Sequence record: OQ411014.1
Reading direction: 5' to 3' (one strand)
Length of the DNA stretch: 64,000 nucleotides
The translations under genes were made by a program, and so were the position numbers. Positions within the stretch are counted from its first letter, which is position 1; the number at the start of each line of letters is the position of its first letter. Below the pieces are notes generated by a model. It made no database searches. It was not told the origin of the DNA and was given only the letters and a program-made list of their open reading frames with translations. Positions 6,061-34,942 of the stretch are shown here, one piece after another.

Positions 6061-6245
6061 TGGACAATTCGAAAGAATATAAGTACTGTACAGAATGTAC
6101 TTATGCTTTCACGTTTATGTCCGATAGAATATGCCCTAATTGTGGTGAAATGGACAGTACTGAAATATGTACTCGTCCATCACAATCGATAGACATTAGT
6201 CGATACCTAACATTGAAAGCTATGAAAGGACGTAAACAGTGCTAA
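6060..6245 (+). CDS. small Zn-ribbon protein
   Basis: CTEC...CPNC. Confidence 0.6.
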   Translation: MDNSKEYKYCTECTYAFTFMSDRICPNCGEMDSTEICTRPSQSIDISRYLTLKAMKGRKQC

Positions 6246-6637
6246 ACATTTACAATGAACTAATTGAACTTGATTTTTTCAAGAATCCAGCCCGTAAGAC
6301 AAGTACTGAATCATTCTTTGAAAAAGAATTCATGATGCATCTAATGTTTGAAGATGAATACAGTGATGATTCAGTGAATAGTATTCTAGTAGTGAAGGAT
6401 TTATCTGAAGGAAATCTCTCACACATCAATGTCAGTACTAATCGCTGTATGCTCCAGTACTCCAATGATACTGGAATGATTGCTATTGTCAGAGCTAATG
6501 TTTCTGAAGATTTATTCGTACCAATAGCGTGTGATGAAGGTCAGTTCTTTCAGCTTATGGTACTGGAGGATTTGGGGAAGATTACACATGAATATGTGAA
6601 ATTAGTTCAAGATGTTTATGCAATTTTGAGCAAATGA
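6239..6637 (+). CDS. family A protein (C-terminal EExFQ motif)
   Basis: DEGQFFQLMVLED. Confidence 0.7.
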   Translation: MLNIYNELIELDFFKNPARKTSTESFFEKEFMMHLMFEDEYSDDSVNSILVVKDLSEGNLSHINVSTNRCMLQYSNDTGMIAIVRANVSEDLFVPIACDEGQFFQLMVLEDLGKITHEYVKLVQDVYAILSK

Positions 6638-6655
6638 AATATATTGTGATATAAT
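6626..6655 (+). promoter_or_regulatory. class II promoter TTGAGC-18-TATAAT
   Basis: TGTGA before -10; shared architecture. Confidence 0.7.
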
Positions 6656-6665
6656 AAGGATATGT

Positions 6666-7646
6666 ATGTACGATACGTGTTTTGTGAGTAACGCACCAAT
6701 CACCCCAGGTGACCATGTGAAGTTATTCTATATCGCTGAGAAACGTGATATTTACGATACGAATCCACCAATGAAAAATAAAGGTGCAGGACAAACGTCC
6801 TGTACTGAAGATTATCTCATCATTGGATTTCCGGTTGAAGCAGTATATGATGAAGATGGGGATTACCAACACATTGATTATCCTGGATTTGAAGCTGAAT
6901 ACGTTCGTGATGTGATCACATCTCATTTAGCTTACGGATTCAGTGCAGTGATTGATTTTGGTGAAGCAACGTTATATACTCTTGATAAAATCATTCAAGA
7001 TGAGCAATTGGTTGTATCTCGCAATGGTATCCGCTCAAGGGTTCATAGAGTTGCAGTACTGGATTATATCTATGAAACAGTCCAAGATACGATTGACCCA
7101 TTTATACTGAGTTCGAATTCGTTCAAGCATTTAGCTAAAGCGTCAGTGAAACATAGTTATGCAATGTCATCTAAGACTGAATCAGTACAGCAATGGGCTA
7201 CTGAAAATGATAAGTACGTAAAGTTAGAGAAGATTCAAGACGCACAGGCTGACCAGTTCAAGTTCATTCATGCACTTGATGTTGTGAATACTAAGATACG
7301 ACCATCGTCACAAGTCAGTTCCACATATCATTTGGATAAAATTGCTTCATATCATTTACGCCTAGCACAGATTATGTTGCAGAAAGAATCCAGATTCTAT
7401 GCAAATACAAAATTCAATTTACAAGTGTGTAAGTGCATTACTCTGAAAGATTTAGAAGAGTTCTTCACTAATCACTATGACAGCGAAGTATATGAGAATG
7501 GTCTTTATGCGATAGAACGCTATAAGGAGCTATTCCAGTACGAATCACTTTATCTGGATTATGAATCGAGTAAAGCCTTACGCTTTGAGGTATTCTTTGA
7601 AGCCGTTGACGATCCCACTGTTCCTATCAAAGTGATAGTTACATAA
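6666..7646 (+). CDS. hypothetical protein
   Basis: 326 aa ORF with AAGGA RBS. Confidence 0.75.
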   Translation: MYDTCFVSNAPITPGDHVKLFYIAEKRDIYDTNPPMKNKGAGQTSCTEDYLIIGFPVEAVYDEDGDYQHIDYPGFEAEYVRDVITSHLAYGFSAVIDFGEATLYTLDKIIQDEQLVVSRNGIRSRVHRVAVLDYIYETVQDTIDPFILSSNSFKHLAKASVKHSYAMSSKTESVQQWATENDKYVKLEKIQDAQADQFKFIHALDVVNTKIRPSSQVSSTYHLDKIASYHLRLAQIMLQKESRFYANTKFNLQVCKCITLKDLEEFFTNHYDSEVYENGLYAIERYKELFQYESLYLDYESSKALRFEVFFEAVDDPTVPIKVIVT

Positions 7647-7718
7647 AAATTTACAATTATATGTAAATACGTACAGATGTAGAGGTTTTTTCTTTACATC
7701 TGTGCTATGGGAGAATAA

Positions 7719-8045
7719 ATGAAAGTAAAAGAGTTAATCATTAGACTTCAACAACTTGATCCTGAAGCCGTAGTACGTATACCAGTAACTTCAACGAGTT
7801 ATCCATATGGTAGTACTACTTCGGTGGATATTGACGGTGTTGGGGCTGGTATAGATTGGGACATAAGCATTGTACATGTGTATACAAAATCACCACTTGT
7901 ACATTTTATGCCTAATCAGTACGAGAACTTTATGAATGAATTGTTCGCAGCTAACAAGGCTCGTGATGTTGCATTCAAGAAAGGTATCAAAGATGCCAAA
8001 ATCGTCGAAATAAATATGAATCCTATATTTAAAACAGGAGTATAA
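7719..8045 (+). CDS. family B protein (MKVKELI..L...DPEA), paralog of 24293-24658
   Basis: GGAG RBS; shared N-terminus and G.DWD motif. Confidence 0.7.
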   Translation: MKVKELIIRLQQLDPEAVVRIPVTSTSYPYGSTTSVDIDGVGAGIDWDISIVHVYTKSPLVHFMPNQYENFMNELFAANKARDVAFKKGIKDAKIVEINMNPIFKTGV

Positions 8046-8047
8046 TA

Positions 8048-8855: not shown

Positions 8856-9362
8856 ATGCAAATGACTTACGAAGATACAATGACTCATCTCAGTACTATT
8901 GATATTGAAAAGTTCACTCTAGAAGTCACTACTGGCGACCGCAACAAGAAGATGTGGTACAGTGAATATGAAAATCAAGATGACCTGTATGTTGTGGTTT
9001 CTGATAACAGTTCTTGGGGATTGGTATCAATCACAGTATTCACACCAAATGCTGACAGGACAGTTTTGCATCGCTTCAACCGTTCTATCCATCCTAAGCA
9101 CGAACTGGACGTGATGAAGATTGAATCAATTATGTTCGACTTTGGTGGAAATCGAGATGATAAAGCGGACATTCCAGCAGTGTGCATTCAAAACCTAAGT
9201 ACACTGAAGTCCGAGTCTGATTTCTTCAGTTATATCCTAATGAACAACATCAATGATATCACACATCAGAATATCGTTGACTTCATTGAATTCACTGATA
9301 AACTGTACAGTAAATGGGTAGAACAGTTCGGTGAACCATCTCTAGGAGACGAAGATGAGTGA
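8856..9362 (+). CDS. family A protein
   Basis: AAGG RBS before ATG 8856; SESDFFSYILM. Confidence 0.65.
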   Translation: MQMTYEDTMTHLSTIDIEKFTLEVTTGDRNKKMWYSEYENQDDLYVVVSDNSSWGLVSITVFTPNADRTVLHRFNRSIHPKHELDVMKIESIMFDFGGNRDDKADIPAVCIQNLSTLKSESDFFSYILMNNINDITHQNIVDFIEFTDKLYSKWVEQFGEPSLGDEDE

Positions 9363-9753
9363 AATTCAATCCAGATGTTATATAGTACTGAACAAAGAAC
9401 TCCAGATGCCTGTCGGTAAAGCTGCTGTACAGGTTGGTCATGCGATGGATCAGGTTTGGGGAGCTTTCTGTAATATGACTTCACAACCTACCATGTCTTT
9501 GTTGGGTAACCTGAAGTACATGGAAGACTTTTCCAAATGGAAAGATGAAGGCCGTAAGAAAGTAACACTAGGTGCTAAGAACGACGCTGAAGTTCAGAAA
9601 TATAAAGACAAACTCCTTGATGCGGGTTATACTGTGTTTGATATCGTTGACTACGGAATCAATTTCTTTGATGGTGTAACCAGGACTGGTATTGTAGTCT
9701 TTCCAGTACTGAATGCTATCCCTGAACTAAAACGTTTACAGGTATTCAAATGA
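9355..9753 (+). CDS. pth2: peptidyl-tRNA hydrolase, Pth2 family
   Basis: IVLNKELQMPVGKAAVQVGHA, W...GRKKVTL, VD.G...F...T.TGIV. Confidence 0.88.
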   Translation: MSEIQSRCYIVLNKELQMPVGKAAVQVGHAMDQVWGAFCNMTSQPTMSLLGNLKYMEDFSKWKDEGRKKVTLGAKNDAEVQKYKDKLLDAGYTVFDIVDYGINFFDGVTRTGIVVFPVLNAIPELKRLQVFK

Positions 9754-10172
9754 AAGAATTCAACCGTGCAGAAGCTATAGCAGAGGCTTATGAGAAAATA
9801 AAAAACAATGAACTACGTCTAAAGGATGTATCTCAATCGAATAAGCATCGTGAAACTGACGAATACGTATTGTATTTCAACCCATATGCTGGTATGTTCA
9901 TCTTACGAATGAACTTGGAATGTATCCTAGATACAAACCAGAATCGGACGTTATTATTTTATTCGACCGATGAACCAGATGAAGCATTAGTACCAGTACA
10001 GAACGGTATTGGTAGTATAATTGTACACCCTTATAAATCTGAAGCTGAACAGTTCCAGCGTACTTTGGTCGAAGAAGATTATCCTGACGTTGAAACTATG
10101 AAACAGATTCAATATATTGTTGAGTATATCAAAAGTACACATTTCGGAGGCGTTGATGCAGTACAAGAATAG
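9750..10172 (+). CDS. family A protein
   Basis: SEAEQFQRTLVEED. Confidence 0.7.
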   Translation: MKEFNRAEAIAEAYEKIKNNELRLKDVSQSNKHRETDEYVLYFNPYAGMFILRMNLECILDTNQNRTLLFYSTDEPDEALVPVQNGIGSIIVHPYKSEAEQFQRTLVEEDYPDVETMKQIQYIVEYIKSTHFGGVDAVQE

Positions 10173-10530: not shown

Positions 10531-10968
10531 ATGCAATCGTACTTCTCCATAATTACCGATGTACTCGCAGAATATACCAAACCAGAACAGTGGACACCAA
10601 TCAAATCAGACGTAGGAGAACGCTACCGTTCAGTACTGGATGGTAGTGTCCTGTCCGTATCTAAAGCATTGATTGGTTTCATTTACAATGGAGACAAAGC
10701 ACCAGTCCAGGAATTGACTGTGAACATTTTTGCTAACTCGAAGTATTTTGTATTTGTAGACCGAAATACCAACAAGGTAAGAATAAAGACCAGTGTAGGC
10801 AGTACTGGTATTATGACGAGTAAGGTACTTTCTACTTTAGTTCCAGAAGATGAGTATTTTCATTTGATGTTATCATCTGATGAGTATCAGATATCCTATG
10901 AAGAGCAGAAAATATTGCTCAAGTTCATAGAACTCGCAAAGTGGGTACACAGGAAAAATAATCGTTGA
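10531..10968 (+). CDS. family A protein
   Basis: PEDEYFHLMLSSD. Confidence 0.7.
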   Translation: MQSYFSIITDVLAEYTKPEQWTPIKSDVGERYRSVLDGSVLSVSKALIGFIYNGDKAPVQELTVNIFANSKYFVFVDRNTNKVRIKTSVGSTGIMTSKVLSTLVPEDEYFHLMLSSDEYQISYEEQKILLKFIELAKWVHRKNNR

Positions 10969-10993
10969 CAGTACTGCTAGGTGTGCGTATAAT
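10965..10993 (+). promoter_or_regulatory. sigma70 promoter TTGACA-17-TATAAT
   Basis: Perfect consensus; spacer starts with AGTACT overlap. Confidence 0.85.
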
Positions 10994-11291: not shown

Positions 11292-11493
11292 ATAATGAAT
11301 ACTACAATGCTTGGTCGTACGCGATTGAGTTTTGTCGAAAGTACGACATATGCACGAGTACTAAAAAATGGAAACCGTGGGAGAAGAAATTCTTCTTCTA
11401 CATTTATAACCTAAAATTAGGACGTGAGGTGTAACATGCCAGAACCATTAGATCGTGATGATGATTTCATGGATGAACGCTATGGTGATAAGG

Positions 11494-11973
11494 ATGAGTA
11501 GATTCCTTACACTAGCTGATGTAATCAAGGAGGCTAATGATTATCTTGACAGTAAACCAGTGTTCAATGATAATGCAAAGGATACAAGAACATCTTTCGT
11601 CCCGAATTTGATTAACACTGCGTACGCTAATATTATTGACGTATTCGTGTGTCCACGCTATGCTATTTTCAAATTCCGTGATGTTGAGAATCTCGTGGAG
11701 TATCAACTATCAGTTCTTCCGTGGCGTAGTGGATTTTCGTTTATGTCATGGGATGATAGTTATATTGATGACGGTGAAGACATGCGGCATCTTTCAATGG
11801 GGTTTATTACATCAGAAGAACAGTTCTTCCAAGAATCGTTGAAACGTGATTTGTCATGGGTAGAATTGGTTGACGTTATCAATGCCAAGAAACTTCATGA
11901 CCGCATCTTTGAGTACTATGGTATTACACCATGTGATGATGAGCAGGACCAACTAGGTGACGTATACAAATGA
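11494..11973 (+). CDS. family A protein
   Basis: TSEEQFFQESLKRD; start placed at 11494, upstream in-frame ATGs possible. Confidence 0.7.
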   Translation: MSRFLTLADVIKEANDYLDSKPVFNDNAKDTRTSFVPNLINTAYANIIDVFVCPRYAIFKFRDVENLVEYQLSVLPWRSGFSFMSWDDSYIDDGEDMRHLSMGFITSEEQFFQESLKRDLSWVELVDVINAKKLHDRIFEYYGITPCDDEQDQLGDVYK

Positions 11974-12488
11974 AAGTAGAACCGTTCAGTACTGAATTTA
12001 TGCTGGTGGACGTATCACTCTCCAATTTCAAGCGTACTATGCGAAATTCTGGAGTGCACTATTATCGTTTTAAGAATAAACGATTAGTGCATGATACGAT
12101 TCATAACACTGTAAAACTTGTATGTGAATATCAGATTGATGAAGATACTCACACAAACCAAGTTCTGCACTTCAATTACAAAACTAACGAGTTGACTGCA
12201 CTCTTTACTGTAGTTCACAATAAAGTCAAGGAAAAATTCGTAGGTAAATATAAGTTCACGCTAGACGAATGTGAGTACTTCTTACTAAGTTTATCTGCGG
12301 AGAAATATTTTCCTAGTCTACAAGATTTAGTTCAAATCAATTCAGTAGTTCAAGAATTGAAAGAAGATGTGAAGTCTTGGGATGAAGAGATGACCGCTGC
12401 CGCATATAAGCGTCGTGTTGAGAGTTTTCATAAATGGGAAATGAAAACAGGTCGGAAGTTATTTCATTATAATAGTAAGGCAAAATAA
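11970..12488 (+). CDS. family A protein
   Basis: DECEYFLLSLS. Confidence 0.65.
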   Translation: MKVEPFSTEFMLVDVSLSNFKRTMRNSGVHYYRFKNKRLVHDTIHNTVKLVCEYQIDEDTHTNQVLHFNYKTNELTALFTVVHNKVKEKFVGKYKFTLDECEYFLLSLSAEKYFPSLQDLVQINSVVQELKEDVKSWDEEMTAAAYKRRVESFHKWEMKTGRKLFHYNSKAK

Positions 12489-12742
12489 TGAGTGAATATT
12501 CAAACGTATTGAAAGCAATCATTGCTGATTTGGGCGAAGATTGTGCTAATGTTTCCGAAGAAGAATACCAGTTGTGGAAGATGAACTATGAAAGTCTCCC
12601 AGAGCATGATAAAGTATTCAATCTTCTAGGTGCAATGTCACAGTACTTGACTTGTGCATCTAAAGCTAGTGCAAGTATCTTAGCTACTGCGGTAGTTTGC
12701 ACAGAACGTTGGTGTAACGAAAAAGATTTGGAGAATTTCTAA
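12488..12742 (+). CDS. hypothetical protein
   Basis: TAATG coupling. Confidence 0.65.
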   Translation: MSEYSNVLKAIIADLGEDCANVSEEEYQLWKMNYESLPEHDKVFNLLGAMSQYLTCASKASASILATAVVCTERWCNEKDLENF

Positions 12743-12760
12743 TATATAAAAGGATTTTAT

Positions 12761-15233: not shown

Positions 15234-15602
15234 ATGTATGAAGATTACAAAGTAGTACTGGAACCTAAACATCTTGTAAAAATAAAACAAATTTATAAAA
15301 GAGCACATGAGTCCAATGAACCACATTCTTACATTGTAAATAACACAATGTTTTATCTGTGTAAGGGTTTTGCAACAATGACTCGTTCTGGTGGTAATTT
15401 TTATGTAATTTCACAAATGCATAATGACCACATAGAAATCTTCAAAATGAGTTCAATGGGAAAAATTACACATAGCCATACACTCAAATATTGTAATGAT
15501 GAAGACTATTTGTTTCAACTTTCCCTTGTGTGTGATTTTGATTTGACATTAGACGATATGAATCTTATGATTGGTATCCGAGACAATATAGTAAAGGAAT
15601 AA
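15234..15602 (+). CDS. family A protein
   Basis: NDEDYLFQLSLVCD. Confidence 0.7.
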   Translation: MYEDYKVVLEPKHLVKIKQIYKRAHESNEPHSYIVNNTMFYLCKGFATMTRSGGNFYVISQMHNDHIEIFKMSSMGKITHSHTLKYCNDEDYLFQLSLVCDFDLTLDDMNLMIGIRDNIVKE

Positions 15603-16779: not shown

Positions 16780-17286
16780 ATGAACTCCAGAATCTATAAA
16801 GAACTAACTAATATAATGTATGAATTTATGGATTTTGAAGTCCAGCTTGGTGTCATATGGGGTCACACCCAACCCCGTGCCACAGATTTGTTTGAAAACT
16901 GTGGCTATTTTGTTTCTGATTGGTCATGGTATGATGGTCACATTGTATCATTACTTTCTAAACAGTACCCAAATATTGAAATTGACTACGCTGCTTGTGC
17001 TGATTCTTATACATTTAGCAGTACTGAATTTCCTGGTTTGGCAATATGTATAGAAGAAGTTCCTAAGATAAGGACAGAGCCATCAGATCATATCTTTAAT
17101 AGAGTTCCAATTTATAAGGTACTTGAAAATAGGTCAGAAGAAGTACGTATTACTAATCCAACTCCAGAGTTCAGTGAGTTCGTACAAGAATTATGTCAGT
17201 GGGTGATGACATTTGACAAGTCAGAAGAACTTGATTATACTGTCAGTATATATGTACAAGAAAACATTGAGGTCACTGAACTATGA
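16780..17286 (+). CDS. hypothetical protein
   Basis: 168 aa ORF coupled to next gene. Confidence 0.7.
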   Translation: MNSRIYKELTNIMYEFMDFEVQLGVIWGHTQPRATDLFENCGYFVSDWSWYDGHIVSLLSKQYPNIEIDYAACADSYTFSSTEFPGLAICIEEVPKIRTEPSDHIFNRVPIYKVLENRSEEVRITNPTPEFSEFVQELCQWVMTFDKSEELDYTVSIYVQENIEVTEL

Positions 17287-17720
17287 TCAATTATGAAGCA
17301 GTACTGAAATCATTTATACACTGGTTGAACGACGATATCGTATACAAAACCATTGTGCGTACTAGAAATGATGAATACATTCCTATTCAGTATTTGGATA
17401 AGAATGAAGATATCTTCTTAGATAATGAAAACCTACATTACAGTTATCAACACTGGGAATTGAACACAACTACCCAAGCTGAAAGCCTGACTTCGTACTT
17501 TGGTATTGATATAAATCGTGATGGTTCTATTGTTATATTATATAATCCATCAGGAAGTGTACGTGATAAAACTCCACCTGCACGATTTAATATTAGTACT
17601 ACAGAAGAGGAATTATTCCAACTTAGTACTATCCAAGAGGATTATGACGTAACGATGGAAGTACTGAAAGAGTTTGCTAAACTGCACGAGAAATATTTTG
17701 GGAACCTAGACGATGTGTAA
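17283..17720 (+). CDS. family A protein
   Basis: TTEEELFQLSTIQED. Confidence 0.75.
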   Translation: MINYEAVLKSFIHWLNDDIVYKTIVRTRNDEYIPIQYLDKNEDIFLDNENLHYSYQHWELNTTTQAESLTSYFGIDINRDGSIVILYNPSGSVRDKTPPARFNISTTEEELFQLSTIQEDYDVTMEVLKEFAKLHEKYFGNLDDV

Positions 17721-18159
17721 TAGATATAACATAAAGATGATCCAACGTGGATTTGATGTGTTTAAAAATATCATTGCAGCTTATAGGTTCTTGATGGAAG
17801 TTGATAATCTTTCTGAACTTGACTTATGTAATGATTTCTGTATAATTGATGATGCTGGTAATCGCAATACTGCATCAGCCACTATAGACGATGATAGAAT
17901 AATTTTCTCATTTGACGCTGCTGGTGTTATAGTTGATAACAATGAACTGATTTACACGGAATGTCTATATGATGATTCTGGACATAAAATCAAGTTCATC
18001 GTGAAGAATCCGAAATTCATTGTAAATGAAGAAACATTCTTCCAAGCGAGTATGTTGTATGATTTGTCTGATGTGAAAAGTTACGAATGGTTTGTAACTA
18101 TTATGCAAACATATGATTTCGTTATGGATTTCATGAAAATGGATTTTGAACAATACTAG
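17713..18159 (+). CDS. family A protein, tandem paralog of 18168-18572
   Basis: VNEETFFQASMLYDLS. Confidence 0.75.
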   Translation: MCNRYNIKMIQRGFDVFKNIIAAYRFLMEVDNLSELDLCNDFCIIDDAGNRNTASATIDDDRIIFSFDAAGVIVDNNELIYTECLYDDSGHKIKFIVKNPKFIVNEETFFQASMLYDLSDVKSYEWFVTIMQTYDFVMDFMKMDFEQY

Positions 18160-18167: not shown

Positions 18168-18572
18168 ATGATTGATCTTCAGAAACTGCTAATGGTTCAG
18201 TATGGTTTTGATGTGTTGTCGAGTAGTGATTTATCGAACGTGAATTTGAAAGATTTTGAATTCATTATCAGAGATGCAAACAATAACAGTACTGATGCTT
18301 ATGCGTCAATTCATAACGAAAGCGTTGATTTCACATTCAATGATTGTTCTGTGTATGTTGATGCTACAGAAATCGAAATCGTTTACCGTGTATATAGTGA
18401 AAACTACGCGGACGATATCGAATATATCCTTTGTATTGAAAATCCAACTTATATAGTGAATGAAGAAACTTTCTTCCAGGCTAGTACACTTCAAGATTTA
18501 TCAGAAGTTCCTGGGTATGAGTGGATTGTTTCTATTATGCAAATGTACAAAAATATTATTACTAAGGTATAA
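18168..18572 (+). CDS. family A protein
   Basis: VNEETFFQASTLQDLS. Confidence 0.75.
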   Translation: MIDLQKLLMVQYGFDVLSSSDLSNVNLKDFEFIIRDANNNSTDAYASIHNESVDFTFNDCSVYVDATEIEIVYRVYSENYADDIEYILCIENPTYIVNEETFFQASTLQDLSEVPGYEWIVSIMQMYKNIITKV

Positions 18573-18573: not shown

Positions 18574-19092
18574 ATGAAAGAGCTTATTGAACGTGTAGAT
18601 TTCTTTGAACTGATTGCATTGGAATTTGATCCAGAATGTACTGATATTCTTTCAGATGTACCAATCTTCCCTATTGAAAACGATGATGGTACTTCATCGT
18701 ACTTAGAAGATTACGAAGATTATTTGCGTAGCTTCTGTCCAACATCAAACGATAAAGTGCATCTCTTTACTGAAATTATTCATGTACAATACAATACAAA
18801 TAATAAAGAAATTGTATTATGTGCAATGGATACATTCAACAGTACTGAAGCTGGTATTGCACGTGAGTATGCTAAACTATATCTCATTGATACAGGTGAG
18901 TATTGTAAACTTACCATCAAGGAAAATTCATTTATATTCAATAACAAAGAATATAAGCTAGGTACTACTGAAGAAGAGAACTTCCAGATTTCATGTACTG
19001 ACATGGGTTACTTCAATAATGTAGTAAATGAAGTAAAGAAATTTATTCTTCAAGATATTGACAAGAATGGATTACCTGAGTATAATAAATAA
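18574..19092 (+). CDS. family A protein
   Basis: TTEEENFQISCTD; start at 18574. Confidence 0.7.
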   Translation: MKELIERVDFFELIALEFDPECTDILSDVPIFPIENDDGTSSYLEDYEDYLRSFCPTSNDKVHLFTEIIHVQYNTNNKEIVLCAMDTFNSTEAGIAREYAKLYLIDTGEYCKLTIKENSFIFNNKEYKLGTTEEENFQISCTDMGYFNNVVNEVKKFILQDIDKNGLPEYNK

Positions 19093-22960: not shown

Positions 22961-23087
<127 letters not shown>

Positions 23088-23311: not shown

Positions 23312-23728
23312 ATGGAATACAACATTGTTAAAATGGTGAACTACGTATTAAAAAACAACACATGGTCACTCTATGATGTACAAATAGAAGATATTGGTGA
23401 AGTTAGAGTATTTTGTTATGATCCAGATTTGTATGAAACCACAGATTTGAGTAAATGTTTTAATATTTTTCTTGGTTATGAAATCAATAATCATTTTTAT
23501 TCATTTGATGTGTATTTTGAACGAGTTATAATCAGAATTACTAATGTAGATAATGATTATTTTGACACTGAAATTATATTGAATTTTAACGATATTGATA
23601 CAGAAGAAAAATTCTTCCAGTACTCTTTAGTTAACGACACAATGGGATTGTCATTTGAGGACATTGAAGCTATACTTAAAGTTCAAAGTTCAATTTCAGA
23701 AGAGGTTCTAAATCCGTTAAATGTCTAG
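23312..23728 (+). CDS. family A protein
   Basis: DTEEKFFQYSLVND. Confidence 0.75.
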   Translation: MEYNIVKMVNYVLKNNTWSLYDVQIEDIGEVRVFCYDPDLYETTDLSKCFNIFLGYEINNHFYSFDVYFERVIIRITNVDNDYFDTEIILNFNDIDTEEKFFQYSLVNDTMGLSFEDIEAILKVQSSISEEVLNPLNV

Positions 23729-24865: not shown

Positions 24866-25357
24866 ATGGAGAGAAACATGGAATTAAGTTTAAAGCACCA
24901 GAATGCTCTGAAACGAGTAATGGACCATATCAAAACGAACAAGTCACTTTCTATGAGTACGTATGATTCCTTCCACAAAACAACACAAGTGTGGGCGAGT
25001 GATTCATTCGATAACTCGAAAGATAAAAGTAATTCTTGTATAGAAGATACTGATGGTGTAATATATGTAAATCTAAAGTACTCAAATTTTGAAGAAATGT
25101 ATATGTATATCGACATCAGAGATATGGTGGTTAACATTTCATATGCATATGATGAAGACATTGCTGCATTGAAACATGAATCGGAGATAACAAATGATTA
25201 TTGGTATGCTGATTTCACTGTTCCGATATTTGAAAAAGAAGAAGAATATTTCCAGTACTTAACTACTGAAGAGAATCCTTTGTCTATAGAAGAAAACAAA
25301 ATGTTTATTGATTTTGTTGTTGAATTTTATAAAAGAAAAGAAAAACATATTCGTTGA
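24866..25357 (+). CDS. family A protein
   Basis: KEEEYFQYLTTEE; start may be 24878. Confidence 0.7.
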   Translation: MERNMELSLKHQNALKRVMDHIKTNKSLSMSTYDSFHKTTQVWASDSFDNSKDKSNSCIEDTDGVIYVNLKYSNFEEMYMYIDIRDMVVNISYAYDEDIAALKHESEITNDYWYADFTVPIFEKEEEYFQYLTTEENPLSIEENKMFIDFVVEFYKRKEKHIR

Positions 25358-25417: not shown

Positions 25418-25885
25418 ATGACAGCCCAAACTATAGCAAAGCACTTTCAACAGGAATGTGAAACGTTCAGGACATTTAAAATTGACAACTGGTTAGGTCC
25501 AGATGGTAAGCCAACTGTAGATTTCAATGCTAGTGGTGAAGGAATTACTAATTACTACGCCCCGAACTATAAACCATCTGTAGGTTTAGCACAGACTATA
25601 TACATCGGCAATTATGCAACATCTATTGGTGTAGTTGGTGGTGATGGAACAGGTGATATTGAACTGGATTTGAGTTATTATTACGAAACCAGTACTCTGA
25701 AGATTCACTACAGTTATACTAACGCCAATGACTACGGTCAGATTGAAACGAAAATTAGCGGTACTGAAGAAGATTACTTTCAACAAAGTACAATTCATGA
25801 GAAGCTATTCTCGCTGGAGTTCGAAAAAGAAATGTACGAATTCTTTCAAGAAGTCAAGAAACATTTCGCATATAAATCTAGGTGA
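25418..25885 (+). CDS. family A protein
   Basis: GTEEDYFQQSTIHE. Confidence 0.75.
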   Translation: MTAQTIAKHFQQECETFRTFKIDNWLGPDGKPTVDFNASGEGITNYYAPNYKPSVGLAQTIYIGNYATSIGVVGGDGTGDIELDLSYYYETSTLKIHYSYTNANDYGQIETKISGTEEDYFQQSTIHEKLFSLEFEKEMYEFFQEVKKHFAYKSR

Positions 25886-25888: not shown

Positions 25889-26302
25889 ATGAGTAAGTTA
25901 TTTGAAGAGTTATTAGACATGCTCGTTCAAGGGGCATATGATTTGGGTACGTTCTCTGCTGAAGAACATGCACGGAAATTCCGCTACGGCCTGACTAGTT
26001 CTTCTATGATCGTCGGGACGTACGCAGTGTTTGCACCTGATTCGTCCTTTAGTCTCAAAAGTGAAGCATATACTATTGACAAAGACGTATTGAAACTACC
26101 TAACGGTACTAAGATTCCACACAAAGAGTGCCAAACAGAAGAACAGTACTTCCAATTTAGTTTATTAGAGAATACTCTGGACCTGGAGTACCATGAATAC
26201 GCGTACGTTGTGAAGAAATATAAAACTCTACAATTCACTGCGAATCGCAAGATTTATCATTACAACAATTTATCACATAACAGTTTAGTTGCGAGGTACT
26301 AA
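25889..26302 (+). CDS. family A protein
   Basis: QTEEQYFQFSLLEN. Confidence 0.75.
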   Translation: MSKLFEELLDMLVQGAYDLGTFSAEEHARKFRYGLTSSSMIVGTYAVFAPDSSFSLKSEAYTIDKDVLKLPNGTKIPHKECQTEEQYFQFSLLENTLDLEYHEYAYVVKKYKTLQFTANRKIYHYNNLSHNSLVARY

Positions 26303-26940: not shown

Positions 26941-27456
26941 ATGTTTTCAATTATGTACAAAGATGAGAATAATCAGCCACAGTACTTAGAGAGTTCCAGA
27001 TTTTACTCTTGGACTGATGATCTCGACGATGCTGCAAAGTTCGCACAAGAGAAGACAGCAGAAAAAGAAGTCAAGAAGATGTACAAAAATGGCTTCGATG
27101 AACAACTCTACGTAGTCTCTGTGAAGTGTGTTGCTATGTCTTTGAATACTGTAAAAATGCCCCCTATGAAGAATGGGTATACTTTCTGGTTGTCTGTTAC
27201 TGAAGAGTTCTATCGTGGTCCTAAGAAAAACTTCGGATTCAGTTCTTTCAGTACTGCGGTAAGTGCATGTACTATATTCAAAACAGAAGAAGAAGCTGAA
27301 AAAACAATGCAAGAATATATTCAGTTCTTGCAGGATTGTTATAATATGTATAAAACAACTTCACCTTCGTATAAAGTATATAAAGATACATATGATAAAG
27401 AATCAGTACAGCTTCGTGTTGTGAAAATTGTTGATGGGAAAATGCACAATGCGTAA
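26941..27456 (+). CDS. hypothetical protein
   Basis: GGGG RBS; two similar A..F..E..AEK segments. Confidence 0.7.
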   Translation: MFSIMYKDENNQPQYLESSRFYSWTDDLDDAAKFAQEKTAEKEVKKMYKNGFDEQLYVVSVKCVAMSLNTVKMPPMKNGYTFWLSVTEEFYRGPKKNFGFSSFSTAVSACTIFKTEEEAEKTMQEYIQFLQDCYNMYKTTSPSYKVYKDTYDKESVQLRVVKIVDGKMHNA

Positions 27457-27937
27457 AATTCATCACAAGATGAAACCCTTCTGGAAAGAAGTTGATGGGC
27501 TGGTGGAGTACTTAGTGTACTACCATGCATTTGGTTCCGTCTATGAACGACAAGGCTTGAAGGACCGTTCCATCTGTATCAATAAATCCAAATCGTACTT
27601 CATTTCATTTCAGTACGATAACTTATTGTACATGATTCTTTACAGCCTGAAGAACCCGAATGTGTTTTCTATTGAGATTGCAGATACATGGGACAAAACA
27701 TCATATTCTACACTATATGATTTCACTGTACCAGTACTGCTAACTGAAGAAGAACTGTTCAGTAAAGCATTGACGCAAGACATTGCGGAGTATAGTATTG
27801 AATTGCATAAGGAAGTATATAATTACTTCATGTACGTTCACACTATGCTTGGGGTTGGTCAGTTGAAAGATATGGACCCAATCACACCGCACATCCAGTC
27901 AGTACTGGATTCTGTAAAAGATTTGAAGAAGTGTTGA
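27449..27937 (+). CDS. family A protein
   Basis: LTEEELFSKALTQD. Confidence 0.7.
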   Translation: MRKIHHKMKPFWKEVDGLVEYLVYYHAFGSVYERQGLKDRSICINKSKSYFISFQYDNLLYMILYSLKNPNVFSIEIADTWDKTSYSTLYDFTVPVLLTEEELFSKALTQDIAEYSIELHKEVYNYFMYVHTMLGVGQLKDMDPITPHIQSVLDSVKDLKKC

Positions 27938-30446: not shown

Positions 30447-30947
30447 ATGATAAACCCAAAGGTACTCAAAACTATAAAAGACGAATTGACAGTACTGCAA
30501 AGTACTATCCCAATGACTCGTAATAGTGGTGTACACAATTCAACAAAGAAGACTACCGTATTCATACCCATTGATGGTGTTAGTGGTGAAGATATAAATC
30601 TCACAGTGAACACGTATCATAATGGAGAGACATTCTTTGATGGTAAGTGTAGTAACATTCATATACTCGTTGTGGGTAGAAATGATGATGTTGATGCAGC
30701 GGGGAATCGATATTCTTCATTTTTCGAGATTGACATATATCGAGATAGATTGTTCATGCCTGGAATGAATGGTGAAGGATCTATCGATTTCAGTATGTTC
30801 TCTGACGATTATGAAATTAGTGAAAAAGAATTGTTTGAATTTTTCCTAGTTACTGATACAATGGGTTTACCAGATGACCTCATGTTGACTATCATCGAAG
30901 TTACACGAGTATTACAAGATACTGATACGTTTTCACCCATATTCTAA
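30447..30947 (+). CDS. family A protein
   Basis: ISEKELFEFFLVTD. Confidence 0.65.
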   Translation: MINPKVLKTIKDELTVLQSTIPMTRNSGVHNSTKKTTVFIPIDGVSGEDINLTVNTYHNGETFFDGKCSNIHILVVGRNDDVDAAGNRYSSFFEIDIYRDRLFMPGMNGEGSIDFSMFSDDYEISEKELFEFFLVTDTMGLPDDLMLTIIEVTRVLQDTDTFSPIF

Positions 30948-31438: not shown

Positions 31439-31828
31439 ATGAAAGCTGAACTATATGATTTATTGTTACAATCATTGAAGACTGAATTTGTATTTGACTT
31501 CAAGAACCCAACTGGCTCAATTGTATTCACGAACAAGATCGTTTATGCCAAAGCTGAAGGCGGGGCATCTGTAATCTACGTACCGTATGAAGGTCAATCA
31601 TTTTATGTGTGTATCTATCCTGACACAACAGATTACGTTACAGTAATGTACATGTCAGGTGATGATTTTGAAGAAAAAGAGGGCAGTACTGAATCTTTTG
31701 GTACATTCAAAATGATCAGTACTGAAGAAGAGTTCTTCATGAAGAGTACTATCAACGATATGAATCATTCTTTTGAATTGATCAGTACTCTTCATGAACT
31801 CCAGAAAGAACTTGACCAGTATTTGTAA
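31439..31828 (+). CDS. family A protein
   Basis: STEEEFFMKSTIND; start at 31439. Confidence 0.75.
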   Translation: MKAELYDLLLQSLKTEFVFDFKNPTGSIVFTNKIVYAKAEGGASVIYVPYEGQSFYVCIYPDTTDYVTVMYMSGDDFEEKEGSTESFGTFKMISTEEEFFMKSTINDMNHSFELISTLHELQKELDQYL

Positions 31829-31834: not shown

Positions 31835-32170
31835 ATGATGTTAGAACTACTAGAAACAATCCTGTACGCAGCTAGAGCAGAACGATATGATAAACTCGAT
31901 GCACTAGCACCTAAAGTGTTTTATGGTCGAGAAGGTGATGCGATATTGTCCTTTACTATCATGACAGAAGAAAACTTTTCTATCATGATTAGGGCAACAC
32001 ACGTCATTGACTGTCGTTGTAAAAACTGGTCTGACGCAACATTGAAGTACGGTTACAAGGAAGATGAATTCTTCTTAGAATCACTCAAGCGTGAAATACA
32101 TTTTTCCTATGAAGAATATCTACTTGCACAAAAAATTTCAGAAGTTCTAAAAAGACTCGCATATAAATGA
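31835..32170 (+). CDS. family A protein
   Basis: YKEDEFFLESLKRE. Confidence 0.7.
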   Translation: MMLELLETILYAARAERYDKLDALAPKVFYGREGDAILSFTIMTEENFSIMIRATHVIDCRCKNWSDATLKYGYKEDEFFLESLKREIHFSYEEYLLAQKISEVLKRLAYK

Positions 32171-32794: not shown

Positions 32795-33157
32795 ATGACA
32801 AAGCACCGTACATTACATAATGCAATAAAACATGTTCATACTAATATCAGTACTATCATGTCTAACCAGCCATATATATGCGGTGCTTTGGAATTCACAT
32901 CTCTAGGACACCAAACTGTCCACGCATACGAACTCTTCTGGAACACCCACAGAGCCATTACTATTGATATGTATGAGAATCACATGGCCTTCAAATCATG
33001 GAACGTTGATACGTACCGATGGATGGATGTGTGCAAGATAAGTTATGACATCACCAGGGAAGAGTTCGATCAGTTGTTGTTCGTTCATGACTTACGTACT
33101 TTGGAGTTCAAATCATTCAAGTACCTAAAGCTCATCAAAGAACACATTTTCAGTTGA
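32795..33157 (+). CDS. divergent family A protein
   Basis: ITREEFDQLLFVHD. Confidence 0.6.
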   Translation: MTKHRTLHNAIKHVHTNISTIMSNQPYICGALEFTSLGHQTVHAYELFWNTHRAITIDMYENHMAFKSWNVDTYRWMDVCKISYDITREEFDQLLFVHDLRTLEFKSFKYLKLIKEHIFS

Positions 33158-33181
33158 CAATGATTTGTTATGATGTATAAT
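33154..33181 (+). promoter_or_regulatory. sigma70 promoter TTGACA-16-TATAAT
   Basis: Consensus hexamers with TG extension. Confidence 0.75.
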
Positions 33182-33210
33182 ACTAACAAATAACACAGAG
33201 GATTGAAAAC

Positions 33211-33639
33211 ATGTCATTAGAAGCTAAAGTACATTTCAAAGATACGTGGATTGACTTAACCACCAATACAGTACTGAACAATGAATTCAGTACACAAACT
33301 CTTTCTGCTGATACAGTAGAAGAACTAACCAAAGATGTTAAGCAACTCATCTCATCACGTGTTGGCTCTGACGTATACAACGCTCAACGCCATATTACTG
33401 AATTGTTAGGTGTAGATGGTATTGAATACCAGATGCAGTACAAAATGAGCAAAGAAGAGATGTTTGACTTCATTTTGACTAACAATGTAGAAATCACACG
33501 AGATGGTGCTGTTTGGACTAAAACTGACGGTCGTAAAGTTCGTGTGAAATATTCTGTCAAGATCAATGATTTGAACTTAGCTGGATATGATTTAGAAGAA
33601 GCTATTCAGTACTATCACGATACGAGAGGTTCACGATGA
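33211..33639 (+). CDS. hypothetical protein
   Basis: GAGG RBS. Confidence 0.7.
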   Translation: MSLEAKVHFKDTWIDLTTNTVLNNEFSTQTLSADTVEELTKDVKQLISSRVGSDVYNAQRHITELLGVDGIEYQMQYKMSKEEMFDFILTNNVEITRDGAVWTKTDGRKVRVKYSVKINDLNLAGYDLEEAIQYYHDTRGSR

Positions 33640-34028
33640 TTGTAGTTGCAGTATTACTTGGATTTGCTATAATGGCTATAACGTTACGTCTTAACGGTTA
33701 CTACAGAGACGAACGATTTCGCATTGAGCGAGAGAAAGAACGTGACTTGCACAAAGAAATATATAAAGCACATGAGCCAGTAAAATCACCATATGAAGTT
33801 CGATTGTCTTTGAGTAAGGACAAGAAGTTGGGTTATGCAGTGTATGACCACAGTGTGGGGCATTTTGCGAACTCAAATGGTGTTTTTATGTGGTTTCCTG
33901 ATTCGAAAAGTGCTATGATATTTCAAACAACACTGGAAGTGATTGGTTCATATCCACTAACGTACAAAGAATATCTAGATGTAATTCTTCCTGAAGTACT
34001 AAACCAAGAGAAAACTGAGGAAAAATAA
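33636..34028 (+). CDS. membrane-anchored protein, tandem paralog of 34029-34379
   Basis: N-terminal TM; LGYAVYD...FAN. Confidence 0.7.
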   Translation: MIVVAVLLGFAIMAITLRLNGYYRDERFRIEREKERDLHKEIYKAHEPVKSPYEVRLSLSKDKKLGYAVYDHSVGHFANSNGVFMWFPDSKSAMIFQTTLEVIGSYPLTYKEYLDVILPEVLNQEKTEEK

Positions 34029-34379
34029 ATGTTAGCTGCAATCATCTGTACTGTTATCTTTTCTGCAACGTATTATATTTGCCAGAAGAAACGTACTGAA
34101 GCGTTTGAAACAGCACAAGCTAATCAACTAGAACTTGAGCGTTCTATGTTGATACAGGAGTCCAATGAGGGTAAAGAAGATTCCCCATTCCTCATTAAAC
34201 GTGTAGAATGTAATGGTCGCTGGGGTTATGCAATTTGGGATAAACGTATTTCTGATTATGCTAACATCTCTGACCAAAAGATTGAATTCTTCAGGACATT
34301 GGCTGCGGTTTATTGTATTATGAACGAAATAGAAACTTTTGAGAACTTTAAAGTTACTAAACCTATGCATACATTATAA
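34029..34379 (+). CDS. membrane-anchored protein, tandem paralog of 33636-34028
   Basis: N-terminal TM; WGYAIWD...YAN. Confidence 0.7.
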   Translation: MLAAIICTVIFSATYYICQKKRTEAFETAQANQLELERSMLIQESNEGKEDSPFLIKRVECNGRWGYAIWDKRISDYANISDQKIEFFRTLAAVYCIMNEIETFENFKVTKPMHTL

Positions 34380-34540
34380 GGAGATATAAGATGATTACTG
34401 TACAACTAAATGGTGTAGAACTAGAACTATCTGTCAAGGATGCAGAGAAACTAGTAGAAGAACTGAACTTCAAAATCAACGAGTACTATTACAGTACTAC
34501 TAACGTTCCTGACTCGGAAATCCTATACCGCGAGTAAATC

Positions 34541-34942
34541 ATGCAAGAAGAAGATATTGTCGATATACTGAAGGGTGTAGTCAAAGAAATCAGAGATAAT
34601 GGTGAATGCAAACAATGTAGGTTCACCATCAATGATGGTAATGGTTCTGATGGCTCATTTCTTATGCAGTTTGAGAATATGACACTTACCATTTACCCGA
34701 CTTCAGTTATAACAAATCAGTTCGAAACAAATTCAGTGAATTACTTTCGGCGGCATCCAAACGATACAGAAGAACAGTACTTCGCTAGAATGCTAACAGG
34801 CACTGAGAGTATAATTTCTCCCAGTACTGAATTAGTACTACAAAGATTCTTTTTCGTTGTCATTACATTCATTCGTGATGGTCTATCCATGTTTCACGAT
34901 ACAGTCTGGACTGGCAATGCATACTACGATGACCAATTATAA
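34541..34942 (+). CDS. family A protein
   Basis: DTEEQYFARMLT. Confidence 0.7.
   Translation: MQEEDIVDILKGVVKEIRDNGECKQCRFTINDGNGSDGSFLMQFENMTLTIYPTSVITNQFETNSVNYFRRHPNDTEEQYFARMLTGTESIISPSTELVLQRFFFVVITFIRDGLSMFHDTVWTGNAYYDDQL

What the first reader, a model, noticed from the sequence alone, without database searches (positions are those of the whole stretch)
6239..34942. 23 small proteins with dissimilar N-termini share a C-terminal E-E-x-[FY]-F-Q-x-S module
SEEN: ORFs starting at 6239, 8856, 9750, 10531, 11494, 11970, 15234, 17283, 17713, 18168, 18574, 19205, 19642, 23312, 24866, 25418, 25889, 27449, 30447, 31439, 31835, 32795 and 34541 (110-175 aa) carry the motif roughly 25-60 aa from the C-terminus. 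Examples: TEEELFQLST, SEEQFFQESL, NEETFFQASM, TEEKFFQYSL, TEEDYFQQST, TEEQYFQFSL, TEEEFFMKST, DEDYLFQLSL. A short linker and an amphipathic helix follow. The upstream 80-130 aa look beta-rich and are not alignable by eye. All lie within 6-35 kb, interleaved with the tRNA genes; none were seen after 35 kb. INFERENCE: a modular effector/adaptor array in which variable heads engage different host targets or defence systems and the shared tail docks on one partner (a phage scaffold, host RNA polymerase, ribosome or protease) or drives co-oligomerisation.
Basis: partly seen in the sequence, partly recalled or inferred. Interest (0 to 1): 0.87.

Follow-up and report, generated by a model that had tools for sequence, protein, structure and literature searches.

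The report
Expanded small-protein family in jumbo phage
A 34-kb stretch of the jumbo E. coli phage EJP2 carries 24 fast-diverging copies of one small, mostly acidic, single-domain protein of unknown function, so the "variable head plus shared tail" is one fold whose conserved helix stayed recognisable.

Summary
The window is Escherichia phage EJP2 (Asteriusvirus, 349 kb), bases 248001-312000. All 23 ORFs exist and are annotated as hypothetical proteins. The shared C-terminal motif is real. A profile built only from 67 unrelated relatives from other phages recovers 21 of the 23 at E<0.01. Shuffled sequences almost never contain the motif, and synonymous codons vary, so selection acts on the protein.

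The modular reading is not supported. The N-terminal parts cannot be aligned by sequence, but they have uniform length and a shared pattern of hydrophobic positions. Two AlphaFold models (pLDDT 88 and 83) give the same single domain: helix, seven strands, two helices. The motif forms the first C-terminal helix. Independently predicted models of phage relatives match over the full length. The tail never occurs alone or on another protein type.

The family has no Pfam or PDB relative and spans at least 25 PHROGs of unknown function. It occurs only in RaK2-like jumbo phages, and its gene content turns over strongly between phages of one genus. The array sits among strong sigma-70 promoters, and members are absent from two virion proteomes.

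Best reading: early, non-virion binding proteins on one scaffold. This function is inferred, not shown.

The parts
1047..1520 (+).
   Evidence: It is the only non-listed ORF in the window with the strict motif, which lies about 25 aa from the C-terminus. Its head matches the independent family profile at E 0.009. The last helix is shortened.
6239..6637 (+). Family member EJP02_351 (132 aa)
   Evidence: Independent profile E 2.3e-10. Leave-one-out tail E 0.0011.
8856..9362 (+). Family member EJP02_355 (168 aa)
   Evidence: Independent profile E 4e-08. Leave-one-out tail E 0.0019.
9750..10172 (+). Family member EJP02_357 (140 aa)
   Evidence: Independent profile E 0.0029. Leave-one-out tail E 0.0036.
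10531..10968 (+). Family member EJP02_359 (145 aa); not acidic (pI 7.9)
   Evidence: Independent profile E 0.0013. Leave-one-out tail E 0.0011. pI.
11482..11973 (+).
   Evidence: Independent profile E 7.2e-18. AlphaFold pLDDT 83.1, pTM 0.77: H7-19, seven strands, H108-117 (motif), H125-142. Relatives at 32-41% identity occur in Munch, GAP32 and CBB.
11970..12488 (+). Family member EJP02_363 (172 aa); basic (pI 8.9) with a long C-terminal extension
   Evidence: Independent profile E 0.0022. Leave-one-out tail E 0.0021. pI.
15234..15602 (+). Family member EJP02_369 (122 aa)
   Evidence: Independent profile E 6.6e-11.
17283..17720 (+). Family member EJP02_374 (145 aa)
   Evidence: Independent profile E 4.2e-14. 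Linked to 23312, 30447 and 31439 by iterative search.
17713..18159 (+). Family member EJP02_375 (148 aa); recent tandem duplicate of the next gene
   Evidence: Independent profile E 9e-07. Full-length match to 18168-18572 at E 9e-64.
18168..18572 (+). Family member EJP02_376 (134 aa)
   Evidence: Independent profile E 2e-10.
18574..19092 (+). Marginal family member EJP02_377 (172 aa), with the region just after the motif shortened
   Evidence: Independent profile E 0.015. Leave-one-out tail E 0.73. The motif is visible in the translation.
19208..19594 (+).
   Evidence: Independent profile E 2.5e-07. Its head clusters with four relatives from other phages.
19642..20001 (+). Family member EJP02_379 (119 aa)
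   Evidence: Independent profile E 4.3e-05. phrog_38341 E 3.9e-45. A 66%-identical orthologue is present in phAPEC6.
23312..23728 (+). Family member EJP02_389 (138 aa); the first modelled member
   Evidence: AlphaFold pLDDT 87.9, pTM 0.82: H5-15, seven strands, H98-107 (motif), H115-125. Independent profile E 1.3e-14. Orthologues in 37 phage records are all annotated hypothetical.
24878..25357 (+).
   Evidence: Independent profile E 1.1e-10.
25418..25885 (+). Family member EJP02_395 (155 aa)
   Evidence: Independent profile E 1.7e-13.
25919..26302 (+).
   Evidence: Independent profile E 1.8e-10.
27449..27937 (+). Family member EJP02_400 (162 aa) with a C-terminal extension
   Evidence: Independent profile E 1.4e-08.
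30447..30947 (+). Marginal family member EJP02_407 (166 aa)
   Evidence: Independent profile E 0.033. It is linked to 23312 over about 70 residues at E 3.4e-20 by iterative search.
31439..31828 (+). Family member EJP02_409 (129 aa)
   Evidence: Independent profile E 4.4e-14.
31838..32170 (+).
   Evidence: Independent profile E 2.7e-08.
32795..33157 (+). Family member EJP02_412 (120 aa) with a degenerate motif
   Evidence: Independent profile E 1.1e-07. Leave-one-out tail E 28.
34541..34942 (+). Family member EJP02_417 (133 aa); last of the array
   Evidence: Independent profile E 0.0031. Leave-one-out tail E 0.12.
10965..10993 (+). Perfect sigma-70 consensus promoter-like site inside the array
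   Evidence: 12 of 12 hexamer matches with a 17-nt spacer.
19058..19086 (+). Perfect sigma-70 consensus promoter-like site
   Evidence: 12 of 12 matches.
23030..23057 (+). Perfect sigma-70 consensus promoter-like site, upstream of 23312
   Evidence: 12 of 12 matches. All nine sites scoring 11 or more of 12 in 5.5-25 kb lie on the + strand.

Best explanation
The 24 genes are tandemly expanded, strongly diverged paralogues of ONE small single-domain protein. They are not heads joined to a portable tail.

Shown:
- The fold is an N-terminal helix, a seven-strand antiparallel sheet and two C-terminal helices.
The 'linker plus amphipathic helix' is the turn and the last helix of the same domain.

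Inferred from helical periodicity:
- Nearly every position of the motif helix is conserved except two. This fits a helix packed against the sheet on one side and the last helix on the other. A Thr/Ser plus acidic run would cap its N-terminus. On this reading it is the structural keystone of the fold, which explains why it stayed recognisable while the sheet sequences drifted beyond alignment.

Inferred from context:
- The genes lie in the early, host-RNA-polymerase-transcribed accessory region.
- The products stay in the infected cell rather than in the virion.

Inferred, not shown:
- The products act as a repertoire of mostly acidic binding or inhibitor proteins. Their variable sheet and loop surfaces would recognise different host or competitor proteins.
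- An arms race would explain the near-complete turnover of the repertoire between phages of one genus.
For: Identity of the window:
- It is 100% identical to phage EJP2, bases 248001-312000.

One fold:
- The AlphaFold models of 23312 (pLDDT 87.9, pTM 0.82) and of 11494 (83.1, 0.77) have the same order of elements. The motif helix is the most confident part, with pLDDT 95-97.
- BFVD models of uncharacterised proteins from RaK2, CBB and other phages match over the full length: TM 0.45-0.64 at 12-20% identity, E down to 2e-05.
- Head lengths cluster around 90 residues.
- Across 90 non-redundant sequences, helix-1 and alternate strand positions are 80-100% hydrophobic. In the motif helix Glu is 98% and 88% at the first two positions, Phe 99%, Gln 86% and Ser 81%.
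- All 89 database hits are 85-175 aa with the motif in the same relative place.
- Among 90 orthologues of 23312, entropy is 0.11 bits in the motif helix against 0.63 in the sheet region, with a hot spot at residues 77-87.

Expansion and turnover:
- 17713 and 18168 are near-duplicates.
- The same profile finds about 19 members in the syntenic 40 kb of phAPEC6. Only 2 of them are more than 60% identical to an EJP2 member, and 10 have no BLASTP counterpart.
- It finds at least 10 in Munch, 5 in GAP32 and 4 in CBB.

Early and non-virion:
- Three perfect and six 11-of-12 sigma-70 sites, all on the + strand.
- The authors of the CBB genome paper propose CBB_390-546 as the early host-takeover region; it holds two of the four CBB members found here (PMC5259590).
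- The four CBB members carry no mass-spectrometry flag in the CBB table.
- No phAPEC6 member is among that phage's 62 virion proteins. The two genes just past the array (gp077, gp078c) are (PMC7247149).

Charge:
- Median pI is 4.5, against 5.6 for the other ORFs of the window.
Against: - No functional datum exists for any member, and no paper found describes the family.
- Only two members were modelled. The second alignment contained the whole family, which could pull the model towards a common fold. The BFVD matches argue against this.
- Burial of the motif could not be measured, because no coordinates were available.
- The near-invariant polar residues (Glu, Gln, Ser, Asp) could mark a shared binding or oligomerisation site rather than a purely structural one.
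- Early timing rests on consensus promoter matches and on an author's proposal for a relative, not on expression data. The total count of promoter-like sites is barely above shuffles (98 against 82.8 +/- 9).
- Six members are near-neutral or basic, so 'acidic binder' does not fit all.
- Fast turnover could also reflect relaxed constraint.
Confidence: 0.57

Rival explanations
1. Single-domain scaffold, but the conserved helix pair is primarily a functional interface. It would mediate homo- or hetero-oligomerisation among paralogues, as in the doughnut-shaped p32/gC1qR trimer, or bind one common partner. The variable sheet would face the targets. This keeps the reader's 'shared docking' idea without the modularity.
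For: - Conserved polar residues in and after the helix: Glu 98%, Glu 88%, Gln 86%, Ser 81%, Asp 72%.
- The top PDB Foldseek hit for both models is human p32/gC1qR, a homotrimer, aligned over 155-172 columns.
- Most members are strongly acidic, as the title of entry 1p32 says of p32.
- Twenty-four co-located, probably co-expressed paralogues would allow mixed oligomers.
Against: - The p32 matches are not significant: E 0.03-0.1, TM 0.20-0.38, rmsd 12-18 A.
- There is no MAM33 Pfam match even at E<=1, and no PDB sequence relative.
- The conserved positions cover almost the whole helix circumference, which fits a buried core helix better than a one-sided interface (inference).
- No oligomer prediction could be run.
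Confidence: 0.22
2. One reading: a modular effector/adaptor array. Structurally unrelated N-terminal heads would be fused to a portable C-terminal docking module.
For: - The heads fall into 65 sequence components among 110 proteins and give no family-wide profile signal.
- The tail is clearly conserved.
Against: - Both models have the same topology over the whole length.
- Independent BFVD models match over the full length.
- The heads share a conserved hydrophobic pattern and uniform length.
- The tail is never found alone or with another architecture among 1.84 billion clusters.
- There is no low-confidence linker between 'head' and 'tail'.
Confidence: 0.06
3. Decaying duplicates: a selfish or neutral tandem expansion with no specific function per copy. 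Only the fold-critical helix would remain under constraint.
For: - Repertoire content turns over strongly between phages of one genus.
- The heads are not alignable.
- Several members have degenerate motifs.
Against: - All 24 reading frames are intact and of normal length.
- Individual orthologues are kept at 59-84% identity across 37 phage records and 92 protein clusters.
- Core hydrophobic positions are kept.
- The family persists across several genera of RaK2-like phages.
Confidence: 0.1
4. Virion-packaged or ejected internal proteins. The conserved motif would be a processing or capsid-targeting signal.
For: - Paralogous families of small internal head proteins exist in other giant phages (general knowledge).
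- The two genes next to the array encode relatives of phAPEC6 virion proteins.
Against: - No family member is in the phAPEC6 virion proteome of 62 proteins, and none is flagged in the CBB table.
- The motif sits in a rigid helix at the highest pLDDT, not in an exposed linker.
Confidence: 0.04
5. Chance or compositional similarity of acidic ORFs, or a conserved DNA/RNA element lying inside the genes.
For: The motif is short and rich in common residues. The genes are AT-rich and acidic.
Against: - Shuffles give a mean of 0.00 strict matches against 9 observed, and only one other ORF of 379 has it.
- An independent profile recovers 21 of 23.
- Synonymous codons, including AGT versus TCN for Ser, vary within the motif.
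Confidence: 0.01

Closest known systems
PHROG clusters phrog_17453, 24941, 24321, 23322, 30111 and at least 20 others (all 'unknown function')
   Same: These clusters are the family itself. Window members and their relatives hit them, some over the full length. Examples: 23312 to phrog_17453 at E 1.5e-48, 11494 to phrog_30111 at E 5.8e-27, and 19642 to phrog_38341 at E 3.9e-45.
   Different: PHROGs splits the family into at least 25 separate clusters with no annotation. The common fold and signature that unite them are not recorded there, in Pfam, or in the papers searched.
Human p32 / gC1qR / C1QBP (MAM33 family; PDB 1p32, 7te3, 6szw)
   Same: It is the top PDB Foldseek hit for both modelled members, aligned over nearly the whole length. 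The order of elements is the same: one N-terminal helix, seven consecutive antiparallel strands, two C-terminal helices (p32 topology from established knowledge of entry 1p32). Both are strongly acidic.
   Different: The matches are not significant (E 0.03-0.1, TM 0.20-0.38). There is no sequence or profile similarity. The phage proteins are shorter, and their oligomeric state is unknown. This is a likeness of topology only, not membership.
Lineage-specific expansions in jumbo phages, and the plastic early regions of T4-like phages
   Same: Many small paralogues of unknown function lie in a promoter-rich accessory region. Comparable cases:
[quoted passage not shown]
- 22 paralogous ORFs in CBB (PMC5259590);
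- eleven RCC1-like proteins in phAPEC6 (PMC7247149);
- about 35 zinc-ribbon copies in Bacillus phage G (PMC7824862).
   Different: This family has a different fold and its own signature helix. With 24 copies it makes up about 4% of the 540 EJP2 ORFs. It was not singled out in those papers.
Polyimmunity-type arrays of small alpha+beta proteins (e.g. SUKH/SMI1-KNR4 immunity proteins)
   Same: Both are tandem arrays of highly diverged small paralogues with one conserved core. This is a resemblance recalled from general knowledge.
   Different: No Pfam match to those families at E<=1 in any of 79 members. No toxin genes are adjacent. The setting is a lytic phage early region, not a bacterial conflict locus.

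Membership tests
p32/gC1qR/MAM33 (Pfam MAM33) | Sequence match to the family profile | tested here: not met
   No MAM33 hit at E<=1 for 10 window members or for 79 family members. The family profile finds no PDB chain at E<=10.
p32/gC1qR/MAM33 (Pfam MAM33) | Topology: N-terminal helix, seven consecutive antiparallel strands, two C-terminal helices | tested here: met
   Both AlphaFold models show this order of elements. The p32 topology is taken from established knowledge of entry 1p32.
p32/gC1qR/MAM33 (Pfam MAM33) | Significant three-dimensional superposition | tested here: not met
   It is the best PDB hit for both models, but at E 0.03-0.1, TM 0.20-0.38 and rmsd 12-18 A.
p32/gC1qR/MAM33 (Pfam MAM33) | Doughnut-shaped homotrimer with an asymmetric acidic face | not testable with these tools
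   No multimer prediction and no model coordinates were available. Only the net charge is known: median pI 4.5, with net charge -9 to -19 in 16 of 23.
   All 89 hits among 1.84 billion clusters are 85-175 aa with the same layout. Two heads that do not align by sequence give the same fold. Full-length structural matches occur at 12-20% identity.
   The models are single compact domains (pTM 0.82 and 0.77). pLDDT is 80-96 across the junction, with no low-confidence segment.
PHROG clusters of unknown function (e.g. phrog_17453, 30111, 38341) | Full-length profile match | tested here: met
   23312, 11494 and 19642 match at E 1.5e-48, 5.8e-27 and 3.9e-45. The other members match weakly, mostly over the C-terminal half.
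Virion internal / ejected proteins | Detection in purified-virion proteomes | tested here: not met
   None of the roughly 19 phAPEC6 members is in Table 1 of PMC7247149. The four CBB members are not flagged as detected. No proteome exists for EJP2 itself.
Early (host-RNA-polymerase-dependent) phage genes | Sigma-70 promoters upstream and early transcripts | tested here: inconclusive
   Nine near-perfect sigma-70 sites lie on the coding strand, and the syntenic CBB region is proposed to be early. No expression data were found.
SUKH/SMI1-type immunity proteins | Profile match to the Pfam families of that superfamily | tested here: not met
   No such family appears among the Pfam hits at E<=1 for 79 members.

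The most novel reading that the evidence does not exclude
The family is a phage-encoded repertoire of binders on one scaffold. It would consist of about 20 early, mostly acidic, p32-like proteins per genome, possibly oligomeric. Their hypervariable sheet and loop surfaces would each neutralise a different host defence or nucleic-acid-binding protein. The invariant helix pair would hold the fold together and perhaps let paralogues assemble into mixed oligomers. This would amount to a rapidly reshuffled counter-defence library, specific to RaK2-like jumbo phages.
Probability: 0.15. Interest if true: 0.8.

Novelty: new member of a known kind. Interest (0 to 1): 0.42.

Why it matters
Most genes of jumbo phages have no known function; 471 of 540 ORFs in EJP2 are hypothetical (PMC10213699). 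This work shows that about 4% of the EJP2 ORFs, and similar blocks in phAPEC6, Munch, GAP32, CBB and RaK2, are one protein family with one fold and one signature helix. At least 25 unannotated PHROG clusters therefore collapse into a single superfamily.

The family also has a clear evolutionary behaviour. Its core is conserved, its surfaces are hypervariable, and its content turns over almost completely between phages of one genus. That makes it a well-defined target for structural and expression studies of host takeover in RaK2-like phages. It also gives a family profile that would improve annotation.

The result is a caution as well. A conserved short motif next to non-alignable sequence can be the last recognisable part of a single diverged domain rather than a shared module.

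Tried and rejected
1. Head homology by sequence. Leave-one-out head profiles scored no better than decoys. Iterative head-only searches linked only orthologous subgroups, giving 65 components and no false hits. Sequence alone therefore cannot show head homology; structure and column patterns were needed.
2. Extra members in the window. The tail and full-length profiles found none at 35-64 kb. The 35 kb upstream of the window holds replication and nucleotide-metabolism genes. It gave only one weak motif-less hit, EJP02_322, at E 6e-4.
3. Pfam on 10 and then on 79 members: only scattered single hits below threshold. PDB sequence search with the family profile: nothing at E<=10.
4. Word-based protein search with 23312 returned only orthologues at 59-100% identity.
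5. Membership in the p32/gC1qR family was considered and rejected as unproven.
6. A DNA-level explanation (recombination or regulatory element) was rejected on codon variation.
7. A virion-protein explanation was rejected on two proteomes.
8. Literature searches on RaK2-like phages, EJP2 and jumbo-phage comparative genomics found no description of the family. One search was uninformative.
9. Pfam on nine neighbouring non-family genes gave nothing. The ADP-ribosylglycohydrolase was confirmed.
That breaks the rule against sequences from memory. The likeness was not tested and nothing here rests on it.
11. Not done: burial of the motif residues (no coordinates), oligomer prediction (no tool or quota), and a scan of the remaining roughly 250 kb of EJP2.

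Full report
WHERE THE WINDOW COMES FROM. The window is 100% identical to Escherichia phage EJP2 (OQ411014.1, 349,185 bp, genus Asteriusvirus), bases 248001-312000. EJP2 is a RaK2/121Q-like jumbo myovirus. Its describing paper assigns functions to only 69 of 540 ORFs and says nothing about this region (PMC10213699). Nearly all genes of the window lie on the + strand. G+C is 32-41%. Six tRNA genes lie at 8.7-20.8 kb.

CHECK OF THE OBSERVATION.
- All 23 ORFs exist, and each matches an annotated 'hypothetical protein' CDS. GenBank uses slightly different starts for five of them.
- The C-terminal region aligns in all 23.
- The literal motif is looser than the title. The strict pattern EE..FQ.S is present in 9 of 23, E[ED]..FQ in 12, and a relaxed pattern in 21.
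- The strict pattern occurs in only one of the other 379 six-frame ORFs. It occurs essentially never in 1000 shuffles of the family proteins (mean 0.00).
- A leave-one-out tail profile gave E<0.01 for 18 of 23.
- A fully independent test used a profile built from 67 database relatives. None comes from the window, and none is a 50%-identity orthologue of a window member. It found 21 of 23 at E<0.01. ORF 18574 scored 0.015 and ORF 30447 scored 0.033. The next unrelated ORFs scored E>0.1.
- Codons inside the motif vary synonymously, including AGT versus TCN for serine. The constraint is therefore on the protein, not on a DNA or RNA element.
- The one extra ORF with the strict motif is 1047-1520 (EJP02_339). 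It also matches the head part of the independent profile (E 0.009).
- No member lies at 35-64 kb. None lies in the 35 kb upstream of the window, which holds ribonucleotide reductase, gyrase and clamp-loader genes. The array therefore spans window 1047-34942.

ARE THE HEADS REALLY DIFFERENT? At sequence level, yes.
- Leave-one-out head profiles did not separate held-out heads from decoys.
- Iterative head-only searches on 110 family proteins gave 65 separate components and no false positives.

At fold level, no.
- Head lengths are narrowly distributed around 90 residues.
- In an alignment of 90 non-redundant members, the first helix has an i, i+3, i+7 hydrophobic stripe. Alternate positions of the strands are 80-100% hydrophobic. 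Two strand positions are Tyr in 40-45% of sequences.
- The AlphaFold model of 23312 (pLDDT 87.9, pTM 0.82) has H5-15, seven strands, a short turn, H98-107 and H115-125.
- The model of 11494, whose head does not align with that of 23312, has H7-19, seven strands, H108-117 and H125-142 (pLDDT 83.1, pTM 0.77).
It matched 23312 over 135-146 columns to uncharacterised proteins of RaK2, CBB and other phages, at 11-20% identity and TM 0.45-0.64 (E 2e-05 to 8e-03).

THE MOTIF HELIX. The column shares below are from 90 sequences, in 23312 numbering.
- Thr 58% at 97, mostly Ser, Asp or Asn otherwise.
- Glu 98% at 98, Glu 88% at 99, Glu 62% at 100.
- Hydrophobic 92% at 101, Phe 99% at 102, Gln 86% at 103.
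- Position 104 is variable.
- Ser 81% at 105. Position 106 is Thr in 52% and hydrophobic in 48%. Hydrophobic 88% at 107.
- Position 108 is variable. Asp 72% at 109.
- The last helix then carries hydrophobic positions every three or four residues.

On a helical wheel only 104 and 108 are free. I infer a helix packed on two sides, against the sheet and the last helix, with a Thr/Ser plus Glu capping arrangement at its start. That makes it a structural keystone. The conserved polar residues leave room for a shared functional site.

Among 90 orthologues of 23312, entropy is 0.11 bits in this helix against 0.63 in the sheet region. Variation is concentrated at residues 77-87, the last hairpin.

HOW WIDE IS THE FAMILY?
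- A profile of the 23 paralogues was searched against 1.84 billion cluster representatives. It found only 89 proteins at E<=0.001.
- All 89 are 85-175 aa. In nearly all of them the same signature can be read at the same relative position. None has extra domains.
- Named sources are RaK2-like jumbo phages: Asteriusvirus coliphages, Salmonella phages Munch, SE_PL and 7t3, Klebsiella phage fENko-Kae01, Cronobacter GAP32, Pectobacterium CBB and Klebsiella RaK2. The 'E. coli' or 'Salmonella' records are contigs of about 350 kb, which is phage genome size.
- No Pfam family matches, and the family has no PDB sequence relative.
- The family is spread over at least 25 PHROG clusters, all of unknown function.
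- No paper found describes it. The RaK2 and CBB papers mention only that many ORFs are paralogues.

ARRAY DYNAMICS.
- 17713 and 18168 are recent tandem duplicates (E 9e-64).
- The same tail profile finds about 19 members in the syntenic 40 kb of phAPEC6, at least 10 in Munch, 5 in GAP32 and 4 in CBB.
- Of the 19 in phAPEC6, which belongs to the same genus as EJP2, only two are more than 60% identical to an EJP2 member. Ten have no BLASTP counterpart among the 23.
- Individual orthologues, where present, are kept at 59-84% identity across 37 phage records.
- Cores are kept, surfaces diverge, and the gene set turns over.

CONTEXT AND LIKELY ROLE.
- The stretch 5.5-25 kb has three perfect and six 11-of-12 sigma-70 consensus sites, all on the coding strand.
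- The total count of looser sites is only slightly above shuffles, so only the top sites carry weight.
- The CBB authors propose CBB_390-546 as the early host-takeover region. It is rich in RpoD-like promoters and short hypothetical genes, and it holds two of the four CBB members found here (PMC5259590).
- None of the four CBB members is flagged as detected by virion mass spectrometry.
- None of the phAPEC6 members is among its 62 virion proteins. The only virion proteins in that part of the map are gp077 and gp078c (PMC7247149).
- Their relatives are the two genes just past the end of the EJP2 array, at 35787-36929 (minus strand) and 34957-35754 (42% and 22% identity).
- Neighbours include an ADP-ribosylglycohydrolase (Pfam E 5.7e-66), a cytosine methyltransferase, tRNAs and, at 41.8 kb, an RpoD-like sigma factor.
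- Most members are acidic: median pI 4.5, net charge -9 to -19 in 16 of 23. Six are near-neutral or basic.

From this I infer early-expressed, non-virion proteins that bind other macromolecules through their variable surfaces, under arms-race-like turnover. None of this is shown directly.

COMPARISON WITH KNOWN FOLDS.
- For both models the best PDB match is human p32/gC1qR (1p32, 7te3, 6szw), aligned over nearly the full length.
- That protein has the same order of elements and is also very acidic.
- The scores are not significant (E 0.03-0.1, TM 0.20-0.38) and there is no sequence signal.
- I therefore record a likeness of topology and do not file the family under MAM33.

VERDICT.
- The modular interpretation fails its own test. 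This is one diverged single-domain family whose C-terminal helix pair is the conserved core.
Different members may address different targets, and the conserved helix may also serve a common contact.
- The family is undescribed as such, but it belongs to a familiar kind: lineage-specific expansions of small accessory genes in large phages.

Noticed in passing
window 1047-1520 (+): EJP02_339 (157 aa) carries the strict motif about 25 aa from its C-terminus and matches the head part of the independent family profile.
   Followed up: partly
window 34957-35754 (+) and 35787-36929 (-): The two genes just past the array are related to phAPEC6 gp078c (22% identity, E 7e-12) and gp077 (42%, E 1e-94). 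Both were detected in the phAPEC6 virion proteome. They form an isolated pair of virion-protein genes, one on the minus strand, inside an otherwise early-looking region.
   Followed up: partly
window 19102-19191 (+): ARAGORN reads the anticodon of this tRNA-Ser as ACT, which is an unusual A34 anticodon. The loop can be read in the sequence. AGT is the most used serine codon in the family genes (80 of 236) and the main one at the conserved Ser of the motif.
   Followed up: no
window 20029-20238 / 22536-22751; 7719-8045 / 24293-24658; 44346-44690 / 54750-55082; 56230-56826 / 61302-61964 (all +): Four further pairs of small paralogous ORFs unrelated to the family were linked by iterative search at E<1e-4.
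   Followed up: no
window 11482-13618; L003 20022-21373; L004 20010-21356: The 11494-type member lies directly upstream of a DNA cytosine methyltransferase in GAP32 and CBB. In EJP2 it lies two genes upstream of one (EJP02_362 to 365). This is a conserved neighbourhood across genera.
   Followed up: no
L005 24241-24549 (EJP2 237241-237549, EJP02_322): A 102-aa ORF in the replication-gene region gives a weak full-length-profile hit (E 6e-4) but has no motif. It may be a remote relative or may be noise.
   Followed up: no
window 3164-4105 (+) and 41759-42751 (+): An ADP-ribosylglycohydrolase (Pfam E 5.7e-66) lies between the probable first member (1047-1520) and the next (6239-6637). An RpoD-like sigma factor lies about 7 kb past the array's end. 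Both fit a host-takeover setting.
   Followed up: partly
window 17000-26000 compared with other Asteriusvirus genomes: Only 21-31% of this 9-kb stretch has a megablast match in any other phage record, and the matches centre on the tRNA block. The array is the most EJP2-specific part of an otherwise shared genome layout.
   Followed up: partly
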